A DNA stretch of 64,000 bases from Mytilus californianus (taxonomy: Eukaryota). Position 1 is the stretch's first letter. Each line of letters begins with the position of its first letter. The notes under the pieces were generated by a model that worked only from the letters and a program-made list of their open reading frames with translations, had not been told where the DNA came from and searched no databases. The stretch covers positions 13,082,001 through 13,146,000 of the forward strand of contig NW_026262668.1 of the NCBI RefSeq assembly GCF_021869535.1, given 5' to 3'. A program made the translations under genes and the position numbers. Positions 1-36,802 of the stretch are shown here, piece by piece.

Positions 1-101
1 ATATATATATATATATAGATTGCCTAACAATGTAATTTTAACACACTATTTAGTATGTAAATATAAGAATGTTTAAAATATTTACAAAATGATGAAAATA
101 A

Positions 102-140
102 ACGCAATATTTCGCTAGACTAACTAGCTTTATCAAGCGT
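102..140 (-). ncRNA. Second identical copy of the PLE pLTR hammerhead candidate
   Basis: Exact reverse complement of 1719-1757. Confidence 0.6.
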
Positions 141-387
141 GCATCTATCCAGGTGAAATCGGATGTAGATGATAAGAAACTTTTGCAGCTCAATGTATAT
201 GTTGCACTTGAATTTAGCTGCCTAGAAAATAATACATAATTTGGATGAAGTTCAAGATTTTTACAAAATTGGTAGTTGAAGTTAGCAACGTCCATTGGCC
301 AATATTACAGGATAAAAAAGACGATGCTGTGTACTAAATTATTCTTTATCTTTCCTGTATCTTTTCTCATCTTTTTCGTTAAGACCA

Positions 388-744
388 TCAGGTTCTAAAG
401 TGTGGAGTTGGTGGATCCAAAAATTTTCTCCTTCTCGCCGTGGTGTCCCACTCGGTGTTGACTTCTATGATTTGGAAGGTAACATTATCAAAAGAATGTT
501 TCGTTGAACGAAGATGTCTTGTGAGAGGACAGTTTTTGTTGGTTTTGTACCATGAACGATGGTTATTGAGCCGAATATTAAATTTGTCCATTGTTTCTCC
601 CACATACTGAATGCCACATGTGTTACATGTTAATATATAAATTGAGTTCTCCGTTTTACAGTTGGAATTTGAGTAGATGGTATAATTTTGTTTAGTAACG
701 GAGCTGATGAAAGAACTGCTTGTATTGGCAGCTTTACAACACAA
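388..744 (-). pseudogene. GIY-YIG endonuclease, frameshifted copy
   Basis: IYILTCNTCGIQYVGET, RLNNHR. A 5-bp deletion relative to the other arm removes the ENFWI...GLN end. Confidence 0.88.
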
Positions 745-1127
745 GCAGTTTGTAGCAACCGGGAGATGGAGTAGGCTGCTTTGCTAATACAGATGTCACT
801 AATTTGTCACGGATGTTTTTAGGTCTTCTGAAGGCCATGACTGGTGGTGAGGAAAATACTTTTTTAAGATTTGAATCATTTTCTATAATTTTCCAATGCT
901 TCTGAACAATGGAAGACACATTTTTAAAATCAGGATGGTAAGTGAGTACAAGGGGTGTTCTGTTAGCTGCTTTATTCTTATCTTTGTACTCTAGAAGTTC
1001 TTGGCGACTAGTTTTGTTTGCTCTTTCGAAAGCGCTATCAATGATGTTGTTATTGTATCCTCGAACAACTAGATGTTTACGTAGTTGTCCAAGTCTAGCA
1101 TTTTGCGTATTTTCAGTAGAGCATATT
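734..1127 (-). pseudogene. PLE reverse transcriptase C-terminal (thumb/linker) fragment
   Basis: ICS...RGY...RTPLVLTYHP...VFSSPPVMAFRRPKNIRDKLV are typical PLE post-RT motifs. The fragment is truncated at the 1127/1128 junction and frameshifted in the Cys-rich linker. Confidence 0.88.
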
Positions 1128-1520
1128 AATACAAGCAGTTCTTTCATCAGCTCCGTTACTAAACAAAATTATACCATCTACTCAAATTCCAACTGTAAAA
1201 CGGAGAACTCAATTTATATATTAACATGTGACACATGTGGCATTCAGTATGTGGGAGAAACAATGGACAAATTTAATATTCGGCTCAATAACCATCGTTC
1301 ATGGTACAAAACCAACAAAAACTGTCCTCTCACAAGACATCTTCGTTCAACGAAACATTCTTTTGATAATGTTACCTTCCAAATCATAGAAGTCAACACC
1401 GAGTGGGACACCACGGCGAGAAGGAGAAGAGAAAATTTTTGGATCCACCAACTCCACACTTTAGAACCTGATGGTCTTAACGAAAAAGATGAGAAAAGAT
1501 ACAGGAAAGATAAAGAATAA
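1128..1520 (+). pseudogene. GIY-YIG endonuclease domain, intact reading frame but no native start (inverted arm)
   Basis: IYILTCDTCGIQYVGET...R..NHR...RRRENFWI...EPDGLN. The first ~62 aa of ORF 942..1520 are only antisense of the RT thumb. Confidence 0.9.
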
Positions 1521-1718
1521 TTTAGTACACAGCATCGTCCTTTTTATCCTGTAATATTGGCCAATGGACGTTGCTAACTTCAACTACCAATTTTGTAAAA
1601 ATCTTGAACTTCATCCAAATTATGTATTATTTTCTAGGCAGCTAAATTCAAGTGCAACATATACATTGAGCTGCAAAAGTTTCTTATCATCTACATCCGA
1701 TTTCACCTGGATAGATGC

Positions 1719-1757
1719 ACGCTTGATAAAGCTAGTTAGTCTAGCGAAATATTGCGT
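1719..1757 (+). ncRNA. Candidate minimal type I hammerhead ribozyme, U3-A8 core variant, in the PLE 3' UTR/pLTR
   Basis: ACGC / TTGATAA-A / GCTAG-ttagt-CTAGC / GAA / ATAT / T / GCGT. It has a 4-bp stem I, a 5-bp stem II with G10.1-C11.1 and a palindromic stem III. Confidence 0.6.
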
Positions 1758-1932
1758 TTATTTTCATCATTTTGTAAATATTTTAAACATTCTTATATTT
1801 ACATACTAAATAGTGTGTTAAAATTACATTGTTAGGCAATCTATAATTTTATCTGTGTAATTGAATTAATCTCTGTACTGATTAATCCACACTCCCATAG
1901 ATTTGTATGTCATGTGCTGCTATTTATAGGCA

Positions 1933-1934
<2 letters not shown>

Positions 1935-1976
<42 letters not shown>
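1935..1976. repeat. (TA)n microsatellite
   Basis: About 21 TA units. A matching tract lies at 1-17. Confidence 0.98.
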
Positions 1977-3205: not shown

Positions 3206-3890
3206 AAGATGTGGTATGATTGCCAATGAGACAACTCTCTACCAGATACCAAATGACATGGAAGTTAACAACTATAGGTCACCGTACGGCCTTCAACAAT
3301 AGAAAAACCCATACCGCTATAAAAAGGCCCGAAATGACAAATGTAAGACAATTCAAACGAGAAAACTAACGGCCAGAATTATGTACAAAACAATGAACGA
3401 AAAAAATTATATACAGCAACAAACGACAACCACTGAATTACAGACTCCTGACTTGGGACAGGCACATACAAAATGTGTCGGGGTTAAACATGTTTGAAGG
3501 CGCCAACCCTCCCCAAATTGAAACAGTGGTATAACGGCACAACACATGAACACACTATGCAAAACAATAAACAAAAAAACAAATATGAGAAACAGCAAAT
3601 AACGACAACCACTTAATTACATGCTTCTGACTTGGGACAGGCACATAAAGAATGTCGTGGGGTAAAACATGTTTGCTGGCGCGCCAAAACCCTCCCCCTA
3701 ACCTTGGACAGTGGTGTAACAATACAGCATATGAACAAACTATAAAAATCAGTTGAAAAATACTGAACTCATCAGATCGATACAAAGCAAAAAAACAACT
3801 AACCAATACACATACCGGACGTGGCAGGGTATTTATATACTGACTGACTTTAAAAACGCAACACTCATTTTGTTGATTTTTTTTCCCACA
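3206..3890 (-). mobile_element. Abundant dispersed 3' module (ends CATTGGCA(A/C)TCATACCACATCTT), with internal ~170-bp duplication
   Basis: Same sequence order as 47221-47630 and 30190-30560. Confidence 0.8.
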
Positions 3891-4719
3891 TCATGTTTGA
3901 TTCTCATACAACTACTATTAATGCTTACCATACTTCTTTCTCTTAAGAAAAAAACAACATCTGACTTACCTGTGGTTATTGAACATACCGGATTTTTGAA
4001 GTCGCACGAATTTCTTAAAGCGAAATTTGGAACCCATAAAAGATTTTTTCAGTTTGTTTTGCTACGTGAAACAGTTCTTTCAATCCTTGGCCACACTTAA
4101 ATCAGTTAAAAAATGTTGCATCTCCATATTGCCAAGACTGAGGAATAAAAAAAACTGAATCAACCCATAAGAATACCGCAAACAGGAAAACGTGAACGTG
4201 CTGCAACCATACAGTTTGACTTCAGAAACTCGTCTTACTGTCCTCCCGACAACGATACAGGTAAACGGGATTTGTTACTGACCATCAATGACCAGATCAA
4301 CATGTAGTGACAATGCAACGTCAATAGAATTTGATTACGCAACGTCATTTGAGAGACATGTTTACGGCCGCAACGTCAACTGCTTATCAAATTGCCGAAT
4401 GCCATTGCGCACAGATTTATGCCTTAAACGTTTCCCATAAACTGAACTGCCGAAGAATCGACTGAAGAAAAACATTTAAAGCCCTGAAGTTTCCACCGCA
4501 TAATTGCCAAATACCATTGTAATGGGTGGAACAAACGCATATTCAGAATGTGTAAAACAGAACCCAAAACATGTGGAACAGAAAAAGGTTGATCTTTCTG
4601 ACAATCATCTTGGCGTTTGTTACAGGCAGTCATTGCTTTTGACGGTGCCACATTCATTAAAAAAATTAAAAAGAATAATCTAGTGTTGCGTTTCTAAAGT
4701 CGGTCAGTATACTTCCCAA

Positions 4720-5830
4720 CAATAAAAAAGACACTAATTACAGATCTGAGAGTACTCACAGTTACTGACAGCTAGTTCAAAGCCAATACCAACTAATAAA
4801 AACATGACCTTGTGGAATGCCTAACAACTGATAACAAAATCAATATTTATACCAATAAAAACACTATTCAAAATATTTAAGATTTGATTACTGTGTCGAA
4901 GTGGTAACATTTTAGAATAAAAGAAAAAACAAATGATAAGTTTATTTATAGGATCGATAAGTTTACACGGATCGTTAATAAATTTCCGGGCTAGGTAAAC
5001 AACATCTCCGTAATAATTAGGATGTGCTATCCCGTTTGAAATAAGTTTTTTTCAAGTATAGCCAAACTTCCAAACAAAATCTTTGTATATATGGAAGCAT
5101 TAAGCAAAGGTTTTAAGTAATTTTTGGTAACAAAATCTCTGACTTGATAATTTATCAGGAAAACATAGATTAGGCTCGTTGAAATCCAAACCATCACTAC
5201 AGACACGGGCATAGCGAACGAGCTAAGATATATAAACACCGTAAGATGGTGTCAAAGGAATATCATATATTATAAATTAAAGGCAAATTAGAAGGGTCTT
5301 TACTGAGTTTGGCCATACACTGTGATTCATAAAAAGTCAAGAAGAAAATTAACATTTTCAATCAACTCATCACACCTTCAGTAAGTATATCTAGCATATT
5401 TACCTTTCTCATTAGAGAATAAGGCTTTAAATGAATTGCAGTAAATATATTTGCAATCAGATTTATCAAACGAACATTTAATTAAGTAGAAAAACTTTTG
5501 TTTGATAAGATTGTGTGGAAGTGTAATGTAAAGAGTTGAAAAGTCAAAACTGTCAACAGAATCAAAAGGACCATCAAAAGCACGTAATTTATCTAAAACA
5601 TTTAAAGAATTTTTTACATTCTAAAAATAATGAATTCCACTTTTTGCATATGTTTTATTACAAAAGTTAATGATAAGTTCTTTGATAGTAGTTAAGGAAA
5701 TAGTTAAAAGCACCGAAAGATTAGTTGTAAAACACTTACTAGAGGCCGAGATGAAACAATATTTTACGGGTTTTTTTGTGTAGTTTAGGTAACTTATACA
5801 GAGTAAGAACCTTTAGAGGCCTTTTAAAAG
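4720..5830 (-). mobile_element. Decayed PLE-type RT element (probably Naiad-type) with internal deletion
   Basis: The - strand translates to LYKLPKLHKKPVKY, DSFDFSTLYITLPH (5521-5552) and a C-terminus homologous to ORF 46006..46563. The 3' UTR matches 46731-46800. Confidence 0.85.
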
Positions 5831-11887: not shown

Positions 11888-12369
11888 TTTTAATGAAATA
11901 TTATTATTTTTTGTTAAAATAGATATTTTCCAACAATTTATGTTTTATTTCTTTGTGAAATTCATGTTCGGATTATTATTATTTCAAATTCAACAATGAT
12001 TTGTTGTGGCAGGTTGAAAATATAAAAAAATGACAATGTTTAAAATTTCTTTTGATACTAGAAATAACATGTTACTAAATCACAAAGGACAAGGTTTGTT
12101 TTTTCCAAAACGATGGCTTTCAATTTCAACTTAATCAAAAATGTCACAGTTTGGTCCCGAAATGGATCTATTTAAAATGCGTGAATGCTAAGTAAAACAA
12201 ATTTATCATAAAAGTACACTAGAAACTCCAATGTATAACCACGTGTTATCCGATGGAGAATGTCTGTCATAAAGGTGTCACATGTTTAGCAGGCACAATG
12301 TATAATAAAATTAAAATTTGATATGGCGGCATGGTTATTCACATTATCATCCTGTACGAGAGACAAAAT

Positions 12370-12675
12370 AGCTGATCTGAAAGTTACATCATCTACTTGC
12401 CACTATACATCATGTACTGTGTTACAACCCTAGATAAAGCCGACAAGGAAAGGCATTTCATCGACTACCGAAAGCTATACTTTTTTATGTAACCTAGGTG
12501 GTCGAGTGGTCTAGGGCGCTGGACATGGTGCAGGCGGTGTTGCCACGATGTCTATCAGCTATTAGAGTAATTATGAATATAATATGTGTTTTCAGTCGTG
12601 TATCACCTTCGCTGGTGATCCAATGCATGGATCTGTCGCAGAGTTGACGTACTTATCAATATATATATATATACC
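12370..12675 (+). mobile_element. Diverged copy of the 442-bp tRNA-headed repeat family, ending in (TA)n
   Basis: Homologous to 34215-34380 (leader + A-box) and to 34075-34145 (tail). Confidence 0.75.
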
Positions 12676-13183
12676 TATAATTTGATAGAAATCATTATTT
12701 CTCTTCCCTCTTAGTCATTTTTAGTGTCACTACTTCATTGCAGTGTACTGCCGTGAAGTAGATTTGAAGTTTCTTGTCATTTTAATGTTCTAATCTCTTT
12801 TGATTTAACGTCGATATGTTAAAAGCACTTTTCCAAATTAAGAAACTGTACAGTTAAAAAAAATAATATAAACCAAAAAGTACACGAAAATTGTGTTCAC
12901 GTACATTGCAAGTACAATTTCTACAATAAAGAAAAAATTGATAATCGGTGTAGCTTCTAAATTGAATTTCCGTAGTCTAGTAGGTTTTTTAAGGTTTATA
13001 ATAGCTTTTCCTATTTACAAGATAAGCGAAATATGTTAATTATAATCAATACTGATTGGGAAAATAATATTAAGCAATAATTTGGTTAATCCCGAAAAAA
13101 AAATGCTACTTCTATAGACAGTAAGAAATTTAAATTTTCATCAGTTTCCATCGTTCAAAATAAGATTTCTGGTTTAAATGAAC

Positions 13184-20606: not shown

Positions 20607-21827
20607 TTAAACACTGGCTTTCATACCAGTTATATGTTCGTTTTCTGAATCAACGATTCTATATGCGACTATTTTGTTGGCTTTCGTATCACCATATGTA
20701 ATAAAAAGCATGTAATTGTTTTGAAAAAATCGGATTGTCACTGCCTGTGGTCGTTTCATGCCCATGTGTGCCGTAACGATGTGTTGCACAAACTTCCCAT
20801 CACTAGAGAACATTGATACTCTATTATTGTAATAGTCTGCTACAATAATATTGTCTTCATGGTCTGTACATATACCATGCGGAAATTTAAGCTCTCCATC
20901 ATTGCTTCCATATTTTCCAAATGATTTAATGTGATCTCCATGTCTGTCAAAAAGTCGTATGCAGTGATTTCCTGAATCTGACACAACAATGTTACCAGAA
21001 TGTGACAATGTAACATGACGAGGGGATTTCAAAGAAAAACTGCTTTCATCGTCTTCTGGTATTGTCCTGATAAGTTCACCTTTATCGGAAAAAATATGGA
21101 TTTTATTTTGTCTGATATCGGAAACTATATATCTGTTTCTCCTATCTACGATTACACCACTTGGATATTCTAGTACATCTTCCCCAAATCTTAATTTTTC
21201 TATCCCAGCGCAAGACATAACGGAAATACATCTTTCTCTACTTAACGCAACTGCAAAAGCCCCACTTGGTGTAGCTGCAGCAGTCCACGGTTCTGACCGT
21301 TTGCTTACTTGGATACTTTTGACCAACCGACCGCTACCGGTATAGATCAGCAAACTGCTATTGAGAACGTCAGTTACAATAACGGTGCCATTGTATATAT
21401 GATATATTCCTGTTCCATTACGTAGTTGACCTTGTTCTGAACCCGTATTTCCAAATCTATTATATAGGTAAGCTTTAAACCTATTGCCAGCTTGTTCATA
21501 TTCGTCGAGTAGAGAGAAAGTTCTGACTTTTCGAAGACCCTGTTCTTCCCTTGATATAATCGAAATAGTGTCCTCCTTTTTCAGTAAACTTAAAAAATCT
21601 TCGCGCTCGAATGATGCACATGATACTATACTATCCTTGTGTTTCATATGTCCCAAATTAGGGAACAATTCTCCGTACCCACTGTCTCCTTCACTGTCTA
21701 TATCTTCTGTCATGATACTAAGTCCTGGATTATCAAACCCACCTATGTCAAAGGAGACCCTTCGTTGGCGGCGAATTAGTACTGGGGATGATGGTTTATT
21801 TGATTTACTTGCACCTGGAATGAACAT
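20607..21827 (-). CDS. NHL-repeat (beta-propeller) protein related to the TRIM2/3/71 NHL domain, without RING/B-box, with a ~115-aa acidic/Ser-rich N-terminus
   Basis: 406-aa uninterrupted ORF. NHL repeats include PSGVIVDRRNRYIVSDIRQNKIHIF, PRHVTLSHSGNIVVSDSGNHCIRLF and FGKYGSNDGELKFPHGICTDHEDNIIVADYYNNRVSMF. An in-frame TAA lies just upstream of the ATG (21846-21848). Confidence 0.93.
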   Translation of the reverse strand: MFIPGASKSNKPSSPVLIRRQRRVSFDIGGFDNPGLSIMTEDIDSEGDSGYGELFPNLGHMKHKDSIVSCASFEREDFLSLLKKEDTISIISREEQGLRKVRTFSLLDEYEQAGNRFKAYLYNRFGNTGSEQGQLRNGTGIYHIYNGTVIVTDVLNSSLLIYTGSGRLVKSIQVSKRSEPWTAAATPSGAFAVALSRERCISVMSCAGIEKLRFGEDVLEYPSGVIVDRRNRYIVSDIRQNKIHIFSDKGELIRTIPEDDESSFSLKSPRHVTLSHSGNIVVSDSGNHCIRLFDRHGDHIKSFGKYGSNDGELKFPHGICTDHEDNIIVADYYNNRVSMFSSDGKFVQHIVTAHMGMKRPQAVTIRFFQNNYMLFITYGDTKANKIVAYRIVDSENEHITGMKASV

Positions 21828-28357: not shown

Positions 28358-28947
28358 CTTACTGCAGACAAGTGTTAATACAATAGCAGTGTTGCGTTAT
28401 TATGCTATAGGTTGCTAGAACTTATATTATTAATTATATATAGTCAGGTTATAGAATGTGGACATTTTTTATGCACTGGCCAACTTAAGAGTTTGTTTGT
28501 TTTTTGGGTTTTTTTTTTTTTTTTTTTATAAAATGACTAAATTAGTCTTATCAGATGATGTACGACTTGTAAACAACAGATCATAATGAAAACACAATCT
28601 TAATCAATCTTTAATTGTTAAACTGTTACCTTAATTATCTAGTCATTCATCAAAACTTATCAGTAGCTATCAATATGCCTTTTGACAATGAATTAAGGTA
28701 AACAAAACACTCGTGACTATCAGAAGATGCATACATAAATTGGGGTATTAGTTCTGTTAACCCCTAGGTTATCCGATAGAGAAAATATGCCGTAGAGTTG
28801 TCACATATCTAGACGATTTAAATAAAACATATTGATATGACTGCATGGTTAGTACTGTTATCATCGTTTACGACTGTCAAAAAGAGCTCATCTGCATGAC
28901 ATTTTATGTATTTGCCACCATACACATCATGCACTGCGTAACAATCC

Positions 28948-29326
28948 TTGATGAAGCCTAGTAGGAAATGCATCACTCGGCTTTCAAAAATTATATTTTA
29001 TATAGACTAGTTAGCCGAGATGTTTAGGGCGCCTGAGACAGTACACGAGTAGTAACTGCGAGAAGCTAGGGTTCAAATGTCGATGAGGGAACACAAACAC
29101 TGCCACCTGCATATATGAAAGGTTTCTAAGCACAGTAATGTATAATTGAAAAAGAAAATTCGTAATAACACAAAGAATAACGTGAAAATAAATGTTAGCG
29201 ATCTCAGCACCCAAAATATCCGATGAGCCAATACGACGGCTGAAAGCGCTAACAACTATTGCTTTCAATTTTGTTTTGGACTTGAACGTTACTGATGAAG
29301 GTTAATCCACAAAAATGCTTCAGACG
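28948..29326 (+). ncRNA. Three degenerate hammerhead-like motifs in ~380 bp
   Basis: TTGATGA..ATGCAT-C (28948-28974); CCGATGA-GCC..GGC-T-GAA-AGCGCT-A (29220-29251); CTGATGA-AGGttaatCC..AAATGCTT-C-AGACG (29292-29326). Confidence 0.45.
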
Positions 29327-33692: not shown

Positions 33693-33731
<39 letters not shown>

Positions 33732-34499
33732 TACGTCTGAACCAATGACAACTCTACAACAGATTTATCCATAGGATCACCAGCAGTGATGGTGATACAT
33801 GGCTGTGTACATTCTGTATATACAACTCGTCTAAACATCAACAATGTTAGATCTGTAAATTTGCTTTCGCAAATTTTAAGTTCTTCCCTCGCCGGGATTC
33901 GAACTCGTCTAGCGCGTCGGATACAGTGCAGTCGATTTGGTGTCACGATATCTCAGTTGCATGAGTTCGAATCCCGGCGAGGGAAGACCTAAACATTTGC
34001 GAAAGCAAACTTACAGATCTAACATTGTTGGGCTGATGTTTAGACGAGTTGTATATACAGAATGTACACAGCCATGTATCACCATCACTGCTGGTGATCC
34101 GATGAATAAATCTGTTGTAGAGTTGTCACTGGTTCAGACGTATTTATAAAATATAATTATTTCTGTGACTGTATCTTGCATTAATTTGTAGGATCCTTTA
34201 CAATGAATATTTCAGCTGATCTGTAACAATTCCATCTTCAAGCCTTATATATCATGTACTATATTACGACGCTAGATTAAAATTGACGAGAGAAGGTAAC
34301 ACCCGGCCACCGAAATCTTTATTATTGTGAAGCCTAGGTGGTCAAGTGGTCTAGCGCGTCGGATACAGTGCAGGCGATTTGGTGTCACGATATCTCAGTA
34401 GCATGAGTTCGAATCCCGGCAAGGGAAGAACTAAAGATTTGCGAAAGCAAATTTACAGATCTAACATTGTTGGGCTGATGTTTAGACGAGTTGTATATA
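33732..34499 (+). mobile_element. 442-bp tRNA-headed non-coding repeat: 175-bp inverted segment + 1.3 tandem units, inside (TA)n
   Basis: Arms 33732-33906 and 33963-34142. GTCTAGCG at 33907 and 34349 gives a period of 442. A-box TGGTCAAGTGG at 34339-34349 and B-box GTTCGAATCC at 34407-34416. Confidence 0.9.
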
Positions 34500-34597
34500 T
34501 ATATGATACGTTCATCCTGTTTCGACTCTTTAAAATTCAAGAGTCTATCCTAAATTGAGGTAAATTATATGGCCTTCCAAGTACCGTTTTGATCCCT

Positions 34598-34643
34598 AAC
34601 ATCACTGAAGAGACATTAATTGTCGAAATCCGGATATGGTGTT
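34598..34643 (+). ncRNA. Minimal type I hammerhead ribozyme with intact catalytic core
   Basis: AACATCA / CTGAAGA / GACA-ttaat-TGTC / GAA / ATCCGGAT / A / TGGTGTT. It has a 7-bp stem I, a 4-bp stem II and an 8-nt palindromic stem III. Predicted cleavage is after AUA at 34636. Confidence 0.85.
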
Positions 34644-35130
34644 CAAATTTTTGCACCTTATGTTTGCGATATACCATCTTTTCCACGAGTTTATTGTTTT
34701 CTGTTTGGTATTAAATTTTTAATTTAGATCCATGATACATCTGGTGATCAATTTATTTGGCAATTGCCAATGGCAGTCAGCAGGGTTTAAGAACATCAGT
34801 TGATCGACCTGTTAGTCAAATGCGTTTTGTTAAAATATACTTTTCACTTTTTGGTCTTTTGGAAAATGTTGTTTGTGCTGTATTTAGACCCCTCTAACAA
34901 GAAATTTCTTTTACGGCACACGTATAAAAATTGCGGTTTTTATCCAACGCAATCATAGGTTTGAACGTTGTTTTCAATTTAGACTTGTTTATATTTTTTC
35001 GTTTGGGCTAGTATTATATTTTCCTTCGGGTTTATATGATCCGTTCATCCTATTTCGACTCTTTAAAATTCAAGAGTCTATCCTAAATTGAGGTAAATTA
35101 TATGGCCTTCCAAATACCGTTTCGATCCCT

Positions 35131-35176
35131 AACATCACTGAAGAGACATTAATTGTCAAAATCCGGATATGGTGTA
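35131..35176 (+). ncRNA. Second hammerhead copy with G12->A substitution
   Basis: Same as 34598-34643 except that GAAA is AAAA at 35158 (a CpG site) and the terminal stem I base differs. Confidence 0.75.
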
Positions 35177-36802
35177 CAAATTTTTGCACCTTATGTTTGC
35201 GATATACCATCTTTTCCGCAAGTTTATTGTTTTCTGTTTGGTATTAAATTTTTGATTAAGATCAAATTACATCTGGTGATCAATTTATTTGGCAATTGCC
35301 AATGGCAGTCAGCAGGGTTTAAGAACATCAGTTGTTCGACCTGTTAGTCAAATGCGTTTTGTTAAAATATACTTTTCACTTTTTAGTCTTTTGGAAAATG
35401 TTGTTTGTGCTGTATTAAGACCCCTCTACCAAGAAATTTGTTTGACATGCACACGTATAAAAATTGCAGTTTTTATCAAACGCAATCATAGGTTTGAACG
35501 TTGTTTTCAATTTAGACTTGTTTATATATATATATAAATAATGTCATAGCGTTAGAAAAGAATTGACCGAATTTTGTGATTCAAAACCTGATAGTGCCAA
35601 CAGTATTGAAATTTAACATCTTGAATATCTAACACATTTTAAGCAAGTAAGCAGTTTAATCATTTCTGGGTCGTTAATGAAATGCATCGGATTGTCAAGT
35701 GCTCGCAAATGCATGTTACTGATTTCTAGTTTACCATTATTTTTTAATCAAAGTCATTTGACATTTTACATATTGCTACAAAATGAAAATATGTTCGACA
35801 TCCGAGAATTAATGTTCACTGAATATAACTAAAATACGTTGGCCGTTTCAGAATCTAAAGAACTATGGGTTATTTAATTGTACCTACCCCAAAAAGAAAA
35901 TAACGTCACGTCATTGGTTGCATTTACATTGTTTATGACGTTTTAGTGTACATTTTTGGGAATATCACCCAGATTGCATTAGATTCTGAAACGGCGAATT
36001 ATGCGAAATGTTCTACATTCGATGTTTTATCTAAAAGTAGGAAAGCAACTGTTACAGTCCAATAGTTGATTGTTTCCGTTAGACTGTAATTTGGTTGCAG
36101 TCTATAATTATGTAAAATATCTCCAAAGTGTTTAAACGTGAAATGTATACTTTTTGGGAAAATAAATAAATTATAAAGAATTGATTTTTTTTCTTTTCAG
36201 CAAAATCCAAATTTTTGGAATTGTTTTCAGAATTGCATCTATTTGGTAAAAATTGTGTGATTACCTCTGGATCTGCACCACGGTGCCATTCTATTGCAAA
36301 AAAATAAGTCTGAAAAGAGTTGCCAGTTTATTGGAAATTTAAGTTAATTCTATGTATATTTTCTAATGATATGCATTTAAAAACATAAATTGAGTAAAAT
36401 ATCAGTCGACAATGTCACCTTTTTTTAATTCATTTCAAATTAAATTAAAACACTTATTAAACTTGTATTAATTGGTACATATGTAGAACGACCCAAATGA
36501 ATGCCTTGGTATCATAGAACGCCTAGTATAAAAACGATGATTGATCATCGACAATCTAGACAAATTGAATATGATTTCTTTTATCAAACTTTAGTGGTTT
36601 TAATCTCCCGTAAATGGCAATGTTTTGCAGTAGAACATGTCTATAATGTCATATACATTAATTTGTTATGTTCAATTACTTATCTTTGTACACAGTTTCG
36701 TGTTTACTATCTAGATATTATTTATTTTCTTTTTCCGTCTACTTTTTAATAATATCATTTCCTTGAAAGGTCGATCGGACAGTTTGGACTAAGCACACTT
36801 TT

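What the first reader, a model, noticed from the sequence alone, without database searches (positions are those of the whole stretch)
34215..34430. A tRNA-like Pol III promoter placed mid-unit behind a ~90-nt leader that base-pairs with it
Seen: the A/B boxes are not at the element 5' end as in a normal SINE. They follow a leader conserved at 12370-12496, and the unit is tandemly repeated (442 bp). The leader pairs over the A-box region in two alternative registers and contains HHR-like words (TTGACGA-G...C-GAAA). Established: Schistosoma Sm-alpha repeats combine a Pol III promoter with an HHR in tandem units. Inference: a multimeric Pol III transcript with a structured, possibly self-processing module that does not fit a canonical HHR.
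Basis: partly seen in the sequence, partly recalled or inferred. Interest (0 to 1): 0.75.

Follow-up and report, generated by a model that had tools for sequence, protein, structure and literature searches.

The report
Pol III-driven Penelope-style tandem retroelement
The stretch belongs to a high-copy 441-bp non-coding mobile element that carries its own tRNA-like promoter and terminator and inserts like a Penelope-type retroelement. The "leader" is best read as the far end of the element's own RNA, which pairs with the start of that RNA, and not as part of a ribozyme.

Summary
Window 34215-34430 is consensus positions 1-216 of a 441-bp repeat: a conserved leader followed by A- and B-box words. 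The leader pairs with the A-box region.

The repeat has thousands of copies and at least four subfamilies. It forms true 441-bp tandem arrays at other loci. The window itself holds only 1.7 direct units plus an abutting inverted partial copy.

The interpretation needs revising.
- **Insertion style:** copies end at a fixed position (consensus 285, less often 369-389) next to (TA)n. Their 5' ends are scattered, and many have a head-to-head inverted partner. This is the Penelope-like element (PLE) signature, not the SINE one.
- **Terminator:** a T4-T9 run sits just before the tRNA-like head in every subfamily consensus and in 58% of copies.
- **Likely transcript:** it probably runs from one unit's head to the next unit's T-run, so the leader would be its 3' end.
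- **Structure:** three helices between leader and head are supported by covariation (up to four Watson-Crick pair types at one pair). A unit-length RNA folds into a rod whose two ends pair.
- **Expression:** stranded RNA-seq from a related species shows abundant one-strand transcripts with a trough at the T-run/head boundary.
- **Hammerhead-like words:** they fail the helix I and II tests, and one subfamily has lost U4.

Other first-reader notes from this scan describe what appears to be the same family on other DNA of this genome.

The parts
33693..33728 (.). (TA)n microsatellite flanking the 3' end of the inverted copy (target/tail)
   Evidence: TRF; sequence
33715..33906 (-). Inverted, 5'-truncated partial unit (consensus 387 down to 191). 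It abuts the direct copy head-to-head with no spacer.
   Evidence: BLAST to consensus, 93%; inverted repeats I1 and I5
33907..34214 (+). First direct unit, 5'-truncated (consensus 135-441). It includes the minor 3'-end motif GTTCAGACGTATTTATAAAATA at about 34132-34153.
   Evidence: 96% to consensus; minor ends at consensus 369-389
34215..34499 (+). Second direct unit, consensus 1-285, ending at the family's fixed 3' end
   Evidence: 3' ends peak at consensus 285
34255..34276 (+). P1 5' arm (leader), pairs with 34350-34372
   Evidence: folds; covariation (helices 1-2)
34277..34299 (+). Internal loop holding the hammerhead-like word (TTGACGA at 34283-34289). The word GACGAGGAAAGG is nearly invariant across subfamilies.
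   Evidence: alignment; hammerhead scan
34300..34315 (+). P2 5' arm (34300-34311, pairs with the A-box region) followed by GAAA (34312-34315)
   Evidence: helix 3; one pair GU 55, AU 37, GC 13
34316..34333 (+). Apical hairpin P3. Most copies carry the Pol III T-run (T4-T9) in its loop; here it is degraded to TTTATTATT.
   Evidence: (pair with UA 55, AU 34, GC 8, CG 3)
34332..34428 (+). tRNA-like head: A box 34339-34349, B box 34406-34416, P2 3' arm 34337-34348, P1 3' arm 34350-34372
   Evidence: conservation; sub-threshold class-II-like cloverleaf in the old consensus
34436..34455 (+). Tail stem-loop (8-bp stem in the consensus with a GAAA loop; 7 bp in the window copy). The stem is kept in the old subfamily with a different loop.
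   Evidence: sequence
34480..34499 (+). 3'-terminal motif GTTTAGACGAGTTGTATATA followed by TA-rich DNA. Here the next element, a 533-bp hammerhead repeat, follows.
12232..12682 (+). Copy of the 'old' subfamily. Leader plus head lie at 12371-12553, and a T6 run lies just before the head.
28722..29119 (+). Third, decayed copy (about 70% to the old consensus)

Best explanation
The region is part of a non-autonomous retroelement that carries its own Pol III transcription unit and is copied by a Penelope-like element (PLE) machinery that targets (TA)n.

Shown:
- The family is a 441-bp unit with at least four subfamilies and thousands of copies.
- Insertions have a fixed 3' end next to (TA)n, scattered 5' ends, head-to-tail multimers and head-to-head inverted partners.
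- A and B boxes are the most conserved parts of the unit.
- A T-run lies just upstream of the head.
- Three helices between 'leader' and head are kept by compensatory changes.
- A related subfamily is abundantly transcribed from one strand.

Inferred:
- Pol III starts about 12 nt before the A box (about consensus 112-113). It runs through the body and the retrotransposition end point into the next unit and stops at that unit's T-run.
- The resulting RNA of about 440 nt is circularly permuted relative to the inserted DNA.
- The leader is its 3' end. It pairs with the 5' head to close the RNA into a rod with juxtaposed ends.
- The PLE enzyme nicks (TA)n and primes on the internal UAUAUA that follows a UUUAGAC motif.
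- On reaching the RNA 5' end, the enzyme continues on the paired 3' end, or on a read-through or circular template. This yields permuted, tandem, variably 5'-truncated copies.

The hammerhead-like words lie in an internal loop of this rod and are not a working hammerhead.
For: Architecture:
- Of 128 array ends, about 60 fall at consensus 281-300 (peak at 285) and about 32 at 369-389. Starts are scattered.
- Flanks are (TA)n or TA-rich at both junctions.
- Arrays of 3 to at least 5 complete units and abutting inverted partners are seen. The window junction 33906/33907 has no spacer.
- These features and the (TA)n bias are what Craig et al. 2021 describe for PLEs (PMC8557442).

PLE link:
- PLEs with a GIY-YIG domain and a (TA)n-abutting 3' end lie in the window (942-1520, 3' end about 1936) and in L030 and L033.
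- Our family, the neighbouring 533-bp hammerhead repeat, the PLEs and other families all end in TTnAGRC plus 2-7 nt plus TATA. This motif is present in 26% of (TA)n flanks against 4% of random 30-mers.

Promoter and terminator:
- The A-box segment is 16/16 identical between subfamily consensuses and the B-box segment 21/24, against 62% for the body.
- T5 is present in the old and C subfamilies, and T5, T7 or T9 in young variants. At least T4 is present in 63 of 108 copies.

Structure:
- 93.4% of cells are paired, against 23-42% when the partners are slid.
- 155 cells show a change on both sides, against 58.6 +/- 7.9 in shuffles (0 of 500 reach the observed value).
- Individual pairs show GC/CG/UA, AU/GC and UA/AU/GC/CG.
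- The unit-length RNA L025:1172-1612 folds at -137.4 kcal/mol, z = -4.72, with nucleotide 1 paired to the 3' end.

RNA:
- Runs X22-24 gave 3,286-5,268 reads from about 6% of each run, with strong strand bias of roughly 5- to 90-fold by bin, mostly 15- to 30-fold over the body.
- First-mate-minus depth is about 750-2,300 over the body and about 70-420 at consensus 89-125.
- The expressed variant carries T7 directly before the head.
Against: - No autonomous partner sharing extended 3' sequence was identified.
- The RNA data come from another species' subfamily. Only 11 genomic matches to its leader variant exist here.
- The strand assignment assumes a dUTP-type library.
- Part of the coverage trough is clipping caused by sequence divergence. 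Reads crossing the T-run exist (141 + 42 in X22).
- A sharp RNA end at consensus 78 is not at the T-run.
- The most abundant young lineages, including the window copy, lack T4.
- The tRNA origin is only sub-threshold.
- Covariation counts sequences, not events. There are only about four independent subfamilies.
- The template-jump step is pure inference.
Confidence: 0.65

Rival explanations
1. One reading: a multimeric Pol III transcript carrying a non-canonical self-cleaving module in the leader. It is processed to unit length and perhaps circularised, like a retrozyme.
For: - CTGACGA...GAAA is present in the young and C subfamilies. The internal-loop words GACGAGGAAAGG and CCACCGAAAGC are nearly invariant.
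- Several lineages, including the window copy, lack a T4 run.
- A pile of 212-292 molecule ends lies at consensus 78, inside the invariant word. Rare joints link consensus 72 to 128.
- True hammerhead repeats and hammerhead-bearing PLEs share the same loci.
- Craig et al. report hammerhead cores that fit no descriptor in Naiad PLEs.
Against: - Helix II has only 2 bp next to the core. Its 3' half is instead engaged in the covariation-supported P2 helix with the A box.
- No helix I abuts the core. A15.1 faces C, not U.
- The old subfamily has CCGACGA (U4 lost), and the window copy has TTGACGA.
- Rfam finds nothing at E <= 10 on four stretches. This is weak evidence, because Rfam's gathering search also missed the canonical neighbour.
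- A T-run terminator is present in all subfamily consensuses.
Confidence: 0.12
2. An ordinary LINE-mobilised tRNA-derived SINE, whose tandem and palindromic arrangements arose later at the DNA level through unequal exchange or replication errors in TA-rich DNA.
For: - It has a tRNA-like head, a conserved tail stem-loop and a simple-repeat tail.
- Bivalve SINEs are known to form tandem and palindromic structures (PMC11481361).
- Divergence within arrays (3.3%) is about the same as between arrays (3.6%).
Against: - Copy starts do not pile up at the head (5 of 126 starts at consensus 101-120).
- Arrays begin at arbitrary phases but end at the same nucleotide next to (TA)n.
- Inverted partners abut without spacer.
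- The same 3' signature is shared with PLEs and a hammerhead repeat.
- No target-site duplications were evident.
Confidence: 0.13
3. A DNA-level element (MITE, foldback or Helitron-type with an internal satellite) in which the promoter-like words and pairing are incidental.
For: - Long inverted repeats are present.
- It is associated with TA dinucleotide runs.
- A 3'-3' palindromic junction is present in L003.
Against: - There are no constant terminal inverted repeats or a constant 5' end.
- Only the 3' end is fixed.
- Transcription is abundant and strand-specific.
- Compensatory changes preserve an RNA-type structure that includes G-U pairs.
Confidence: 0.05

Closest known systems
Sm-alpha / Sj-alpha SINE-like elements of Schistosoma
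   Same: A short non-coding repeat with a tRNA-derived Pol III head, found dispersed and in tandem. It carries hammerhead-type sequence in the same unit (PMC2770079).
   Different: Sm-alpha has an active canonical type I hammerhead; this family does not pass the hammerhead tests. Features shown here that I do not know to be described for Sm-alpha (my knowledge; the primary paper was not held) are a T-run before the head, a covarying leader-head panhandle and a (TA)n-anchored fixed 3' end.
Metazoan non-LTR retrozymes (Cervera & de la Pena 2020; Li et al. 2026 preprint)
   Same: Short tandem non-coding repeats of low GC that give highly self-paired, abundantly expressed RNAs. They co-occur with PLEs and are proposed to be non-autonomous PLE derivatives. 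A genuine example, a 533-bp repeat, abuts this element in the window.
   Different: Retrozymes are defined by a type I hammerhead and are said to lack promoters of their own (PMC7761336). This family has a promoter and a terminator and no working hammerhead. The unit is 441 bp, against 350-390 bp for the mussel retrozymes.
Penelope-like elements (canonical EN+ and Naiad clades)
   Same: Fixed 3' end, strong 5' truncation, partial tandems (pLTR), an adjacent inverted 5'-truncated copy and insertion into microsatellites, (TA)n in Naiads. Some Naiads have a hammerhead core that fits no descriptor (PMC8557442).
   Different: This family has no ORF and is 441 bp long. It has a Pol III promoter instead of the PLE internal promoter. 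No extended sequence is shared with the PLE copies available here, only a short 3'-terminal signature.
Cassandra, Helenus and Ajax (non-autonomous LTR retrotransposons with 5S or tRNA-type Pol III genes in their terminal repeats)
   Same: A small-RNA-derived Pol III promoter sits inside the repeated terminal part of a non-autonomous retroelement rather than at a unique 5' end. Long tandem arrays are known (titles and abstracts: PMC10886601, PMC7215508).
   Different: Those elements are LTR-type with PBS/PPT and are mobilised by LTR retrotransposons. This family has PLE-type insertion features.
Classical tRNA-derived SINEs of bivalves (Meta, Deu, V, Core, MESC)
   Same: A tRNA-like head, a body and a tail ending in a simple repeat.
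   Different: Those copies start at the head, have 6-18 bp target-site duplications and LINE-derived tails. In this family starts are phase-independent, no duplications are seen, and the tail signature matches PLE-associated families.

Membership tests
Hammerhead ribozyme (type I) | Conserved core CUGANGA ... GAAA | tested here: inconclusive
   The core is present in the young and C subfamily consensuses (CTGACGA, then 22 nt, then GAAA). The old subfamily has CCGACGA and the window copy TTGACGA.
Hammerhead ribozyme (type I) | Helix II of at least 3-4 bp starting directly at the core (10.1-11.1) | tested here: not met
   Only 2 bp (GG/CC), followed by mismatches. The control hammerhead in the window scores 4. 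The 3' half of this segment pairs with the A box in the covariation-supported P2 helix.
Hammerhead ribozyme (type I) | A15.1-U16.1 pair, H17, and helix I abutting the core | tested here: not met
   After the apical hairpin, A101 faces C120. The best alternative is a 1-bp helix III with an AU-only helix I of 6 pairs around one mismatch. The real long helix P1 is separated from the core by 6 and 13 unpaired nt.
Hammerhead ribozyme (type I) | Match to the Rfam hammerhead covariance models | tested here: inconclusive
   No hit at E <= 10. The gathering search also missed the canonical hammerhead at 34598-34643, so silence is weak evidence.
Hammerhead ribozyme (type I) | Site-specific self-cleavage | not testable with these tools
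   Needs in vitro transcription of a dimer.
tRNA-derived SINE | Internal Pol III A and B boxes at tRNA-like spacing | tested here: met
   A box matches TRGCNNAGTGG at 10 of 11 positions and B box matches GGTTCGANNCC at 10 of 11 (11 of 11 in the old subfamily). The start-to-start spacing of 67 nt fits a class II tRNA.
tRNA-derived SINE | Head folds as or aligns to a tRNA | tested here: inconclusive
   ARAGORN finds nothing at default settings. At an 80% threshold it finds a 93-nt cloverleaf with a long variable arm, in the old consensus only. The Rfam tRNA model gave no hit at E <= 10.
tRNA-derived SINE | Copies begin at the head (transcription start) and carry target-site duplications | tested here: not met
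   Starts are scattered over the whole unit, with 5 of 126 at consensus 101-120. No duplications are visible in 20 junction pairs. The sample is biased by the queries used.
Non-LTR retrozyme | Short tandem repeats giving abundant, highly self-paired RNA | tested here: met
   Arrays of 3 to at least 5 complete units. Fold z = -4.72. RNA depth is about 750-2,300 from 6% of each run (related species).
Non-LTR retrozyme | A type I hammerhead in each unit; circular RNA | tested here: not met
   For the hammerhead, see the rows above. Circularity could not be told apart from tandem read-through with short reads.
Penelope-like element insertion type (non-autonomous) | Fixed 3' end, variable 5' truncation, partial tandems, adjacent inverted 5'-truncated copy, microsatellite target | tested here: met
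   definition from PMC8557442.
Penelope-like element insertion type (non-autonomous) | Sequence shared with an autonomous PLE (pLTR or 3' end) | tested here: inconclusive
   Only a short 3' signature, TTnAGRC..TATA, is shared. There is no BLAST similarity to the window PLE. A genome-wide search was not possible.

The most novel reading that the evidence does not exclude
The nearly invariant internal loop (GACGAGGAAAGG facing CCACCGAAAGC), set in the covarying rod, may be a new processing module, either self-cleaving or protein-guided. It would cut at consensus 78/79, as the sharp RNA end in three runs suggests. The ends it produces would be ligated into circles that serve as rolling templates for the PLE reverse transcriptase. 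That would be a ribozyme-like retrozyme core unrelated in fold to the hammerhead.
Probability: 0.1. Interest if true: 0.85.

Novelty: new variant of a known kind. Interest (0 to 1): 0.55.

Why it matters
Animal retrozymes and PLEs are thought to rely on hammerheads or host read-through to make unit-length RNA, and retrozymes are described as lacking promoters. This family appears to solve the same problem differently. A Pol III start and stop placed back to back define the RNA ends, and a conserved panhandle brings those ends together.

If that is right, it gives a concrete and testable model for a poorly understood step. That step is how PLE-type reverse transcription produces permuted, tandem and inverted copies, here by continuing across juxtaposed template ends. 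It also suggests that PLE machinery may mobilise SINE-like parasites, a partnership I did not find described in the bivalve SINE surveys I read.

Tried and rejected
- **Rfam:** gathering and E <= 10 searches on the window copy, a consensus-like dimer and three further loci gave nothing relevant. I treat this as weak evidence, because the neighbouring canonical hammerhead was also missed at gathering.
- **tRNA detection:** ARAGORN at default settings found nothing.
- **Absence of TTTT on the plus strand:** I first read this as meaningful for read-through. It is not significant (12% of shuffles also lack it). A larger sample then showed that most copies do carry a T-run, so I corrected my first 9-copy consensus.
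- **Within- versus between-array divergence:** 3.3% against 3.6%. This does not discriminate single-event from DNA-level array growth.
- **T-run loss versus array length:** I looked for an association and saw no clear pattern.
- **Unbiased census of 5' ends:** The 5'-end statistics therefore come from query-biased loci. Starts at consensus 1-20 for the old subfamily are alignment artefacts.
- **Autonomous partner:** BLAST of the consensus against the window found no similarity to the PLE.
- **Sm-alpha primary paper:** Ferbeyre 1998 is not held.
- **Alignment A1:** one row (window:28828-28960) was given with wrong coordinates and aligned as gaps. It does not affect the counts.
- **My hammerhead scan:** it failed on the PLE-type minimal hammerheads, which have an extra A after the core. 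Its only valid positive control is therefore the 533-bp repeat.

Full report
**What is in the window.**
The finding's coordinates, 34215-34430, are positions 1-216 of a repeat unit. I built a 441-nt consensus for this unit from nine tandem units at other loci; window position = consensus position + 34214.

The window holds, from left to right:
- a (TA)n run at 33693-33728;
- an inverted, 5'-truncated partial unit at 33715-33906 (consensus 387 down to 191);
- a direct partial unit that abuts it with no spacer, at 33907-34214 (consensus 135-441);
- a further direct stretch at 34215-34499 (consensus 1-285);
- after TATATA, an unrelated 533-bp tandem repeat.

TRF does not report a 442-bp array here. 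The 442-bp spacing is nevertheless real (family D3).

Two more copies lie at 12232-12682 and 28722-29119.

**The family.**
- A search of the window's own genome (1.65 Gb) with 34215-34500 gave 2,364 first-look candidates. The 40 scored were 92-96% identical over the whole query.
- The diverged copy at 12365-12560 gave 1,631 further candidates.
- Many loci hold true head-to-tail arrays of period about 441, for example L014, L021, L008, L040 and L035.
- I distinguish a 'young' subfamily, T-run variants of it, an 'old' subfamily (about 78% identical in leader and head) and a subfamily 'C'.

**Insertion signature.**
- Across 66 non-redundant loci plus the window, array 3' ends peak sharply. About 60 of 128 fall at consensus 281-300, nearly all at 285, and about 32 at 369-389. 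5' ends are spread over the whole unit. The pile of starts at consensus 1-20 is an alignment artefact of the old subfamily.
- The fixed end reads GTTTAGACGAGTTGTATATA and is followed by (TA)n. The 5' junctions are usually TA-rich as well, and no target-site duplication is evident.
- At least a dozen loci, including the window, have a head-to-head inverted 5'-truncated partner that abuts directly.
- Fixed 3' end, strong 5' truncation, partial tandems, an adjacent inverted truncated copy and microsatellite targeting are what Craig et al. 2021 describe for Penelope-like elements. They report (TA)n for the Naiad clade, which dominates bivalve genomes (PMC8557442).
- PLE copies with a C-terminal GIY-YIG domain and a 3' end that abuts (TA)n are present in the window and in L030; the L030 copy also shows a hammerhead-like core in its 3' UTR. 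L033 has a GIY-YIG ORF below Pfam's cut-off. In the window the domain lies at 942-1520 and the 3' end at about 1936.
- Our family (both of its 3' ends), the 533-bp hammerhead repeat, the PLEs and several other families all end in TTnAGRC, then 2-7 nt, then TATA. The motif occurs in 26% of (TA)n flanks against 4% of random 30-mers. That sample is enriched for our family.
- I found no extended similarity to a PLE. I could not search the genome further.

**Promoter and terminator.**
- The A box (TGGTCGAGTGG; TGGCCGAGTGG in subfamily C) and the B box (AGTTCGAATCC; GGTTCGAATCC in the old subfamily) are close to the tRNA-gene consensus as I know it.
- They are the best-conserved segments between subfamily consensuses: 16/16 and 21/24, against 62% for the body.
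- ARAGORN sees a 93-nt cloverleaf with a long variable arm only at an 80% threshold, and only in the old consensus. A class-II tRNA origin is therefore plausible but not shown.
- Directly upstream of the head, every subfamily consensus has a T-run: T5 in old and C, and T5, T7 or T9 in young variants. At least T4 is present in 63 of 108 copies.
- Some abundant young lineages, the window copy among them, have the run interrupted (TTTATTATT).

**The leader pairs with the head.**
The leader is largely an imperfect inverted copy of the first 40 nt or so of the head.
- **P1:** consensus 41-62 pairs with 136-158.
- **P2:** consensus 86-97 pairs with 123-134, which is the A box.
- **P3:** an apical hairpin at 102-119 carries the T-run in its loop.

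On 107 distinct copies:
- 93.4% of cells are paired, against 23-42% when the partners are slid;
- 155 cells carry changes on both sides, against 58.6 +/- 7.9 in shuffles (0 of 500 reach the observed value);
- single pairs show GC 58 / CG 33 / UA 12, then AU 53 / GC 43, then UA 55 / AU 34 / GC 8 / CG 3, and GU 55 / AU 37 / GC 13.

These counts reflect about four independent lineages, not 107 events. Three or four Watson-Crick types at one pair are still hard to get without selection for pairing.

**Reinterpretation of the leader.**
- If Pol III starts about 12 nt before the A box and stops at the next T-run, the RNA runs from the head through the body into the next unit. On the way it passes the retrotransposition end point at consensus 285. 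The 'leader' is then its 3' end.
- Such an RNA, taken from a real locus (L025:1172-1612), folds at -137.4 kcal/mol (z = -4.72). Its first seven nucleotides pair with the last nucleotides before the U tail. The result is a rod closed by a terminal panhandle.
- The inserted DNA unit is then circularly permuted relative to the transcript. This explains why the promoter looks 'mid-unit'.

**RNA evidence.**
- No RNA run of the same organism could be identified with certainty.
- Three stranded runs of 'organism B' gave 3,286-5,268 reads from about 6% of each run. Strand bias was strong, roughly 5- to 90-fold by bin and mostly 15- to 30-fold over the body.
- With the usual library type this means RNA in the sense of the tRNA-like head.
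- Depth (first mate on the minus strand) is about 750-2,300 from consensus 157 through 441 and on to about 88 of the next unit. It is about 70-420 at consensus 89-125.
- The reads belong to a distinct subfamily, 90-95% alike. Its leader ends in GAAAGCTCTTTTTTTGAG immediately before the head.
- Part of the trough is clipping at this divergent stretch. In X22, 141 + 42 reads do cross the T-run, so read-through, multimers or circles exist at a lower level.
- The one poly(A)-type run, from organism D, has about 20-fold fewer reads.
- **Unexplained:** 212-292 molecule ends pile up exactly at consensus 78, inside the invariant loop word. A few reads join consensus 72 to 128.

**The hammerhead-like words.**
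- CTGACGA (69-75) and GAAA (98-101) lie in the internal loop and junction of the rod.
- Only two base pairs follow the core where helix II should be. The rest of that segment pairs with the A box in P2, which covaries.
- A15.1 faces a C. No helix I abuts the core.
- The old subfamily has lost U4, and the window copy has lost C3.
- The canonical hammerhead of the neighbouring 533-bp repeat (34598-34643) passes the same crude scan with helix II = 4 and helix I = 7.
- Rfam is silent, but it also missed that neighbour at gathering.
- I conclude this is not a hammerhead. It may be a relic, or the kind of 'HHR_core' that Craig et al. report in Naiads. The loop words are nearly invariant, so they probably do something, perhaps protein or RT recognition.

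**Mechanism, and what is inferred.**
- **Shown:** the architecture, the conservation of the promoter and terminator words, the covarying panhandle, and abundant one-strand RNA in a relative.
- **Inferred:** Pol III start and stop positions. PLE RT/EN nicking (TA)n and priming at the internal UAUAUA after the UUUAGAC motif. Continuation from the RNA 5' end onto the paired 3' end, or on read-through or circular templates, to give permuted, tandem, 5'-truncated copies. The inverted partner as a by-product of PLE-type integration.

**Comparison and novelty.**
- The closest analogue is Sm-alpha of Schistosoma, which has a tRNA-derived head plus a hammerhead.
- Next are the metazoan non-LTR retrozymes, proposed to be non-autonomous PLE derivatives and described as lacking promoters.
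- This family has the PLE-type insertion features and a rod-like RNA. It replaces the ribozyme with a back-to-back Pol III terminator and start plus a terminal panhandle.
- The bivalve SINE surveys I read report LINE partners, head-first copies and target-site duplications, and do not mention PLEs.
- I rate it a new variant of a known kind.
- Other first-reader notes of this scan describe a tRNA-headed, roughly 440-nt tandem element on other DNA of this genome, apparently the same family. I did not compare the sequences.

Noticed in passing
window 34500-35560: A 533-bp tandem repeat (two or more units, 96-97% alike) lies directly after our element. It carries a canonical type I hammerhead at 34598-34643, with helix II of 4 bp and helix I of 7 bp in my scan. 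Rfam's gathering search of the window did not report it.
   Followed up: partly
window 1-1940: A PLE 3' part with a GIY-YIG domain (942-1520) ends at a long (TA)n run (1935-1976). Minus-strand ORFs at 388-1147 suggest an inverted partial copy upstream, the same head-to-head layout as in our family.
   Followed up: partly
L030:2160-3066: A PLE 3' end (GIY-YIG ORF, then a hammerhead-like core CTGATGA...GAAA in the 3' UTR, then ...TTCTTAGGCACTTATATA) is followed by (TA)n. A copy of our element starts there at about consensus 113, close to the predicted transcription start.
   Followed up: partly
loci L001-L071 and window, (TA)n flanks: Several unrelated repeat families that abut (TA)n share a 3'-terminal signature: TTnAGRC, then 2-7 nt, then TATA. 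It is present in 26% of flanks against 4% of random 30-mers. This suggests a common recognition motif for a TA-targeting reverse transcriptase.
   Followed up: partly
L025:1578 (consensus 78), runs X22-X24: There is a sharp pile of 212-292 RNA molecule ends inside the invariant word GACGAGGA|AAGG, about 30 nt before the T-run. Rare reads join consensus 72 to 128.
   Followed up: no
L003:1002-1344 (same locus as L019 and L020): Two arrays meet tail-to-tail at consensus 186|152, inside the tRNA-like head. This is a 3'-3' palindromic junction, unlike the usual 5'-5' inverted partner.
   Followed up: no
L014:177-1785; G000:C121:54924580-54928173: The L014 array alternates two unit variants (units 1 and 3 against 2 and 4). 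Spacings of 884 and 872 bp at the C121 locus also suggest a two-unit higher-order period.
   Followed up: no
window 20607-21827 (-): A 406-aa ORF with NHL repeats and an SMP-30/gluconolactonase-like beta-propeller (Pfam). It is probably a host gene exon.
   Followed up: no
L025:1725 and 1722 (loose ends): RNA reads share the tRNA-like head but continue into a different body after about consensus 225. This indicates at least one other expressed family with the same head.
   Followed up: no
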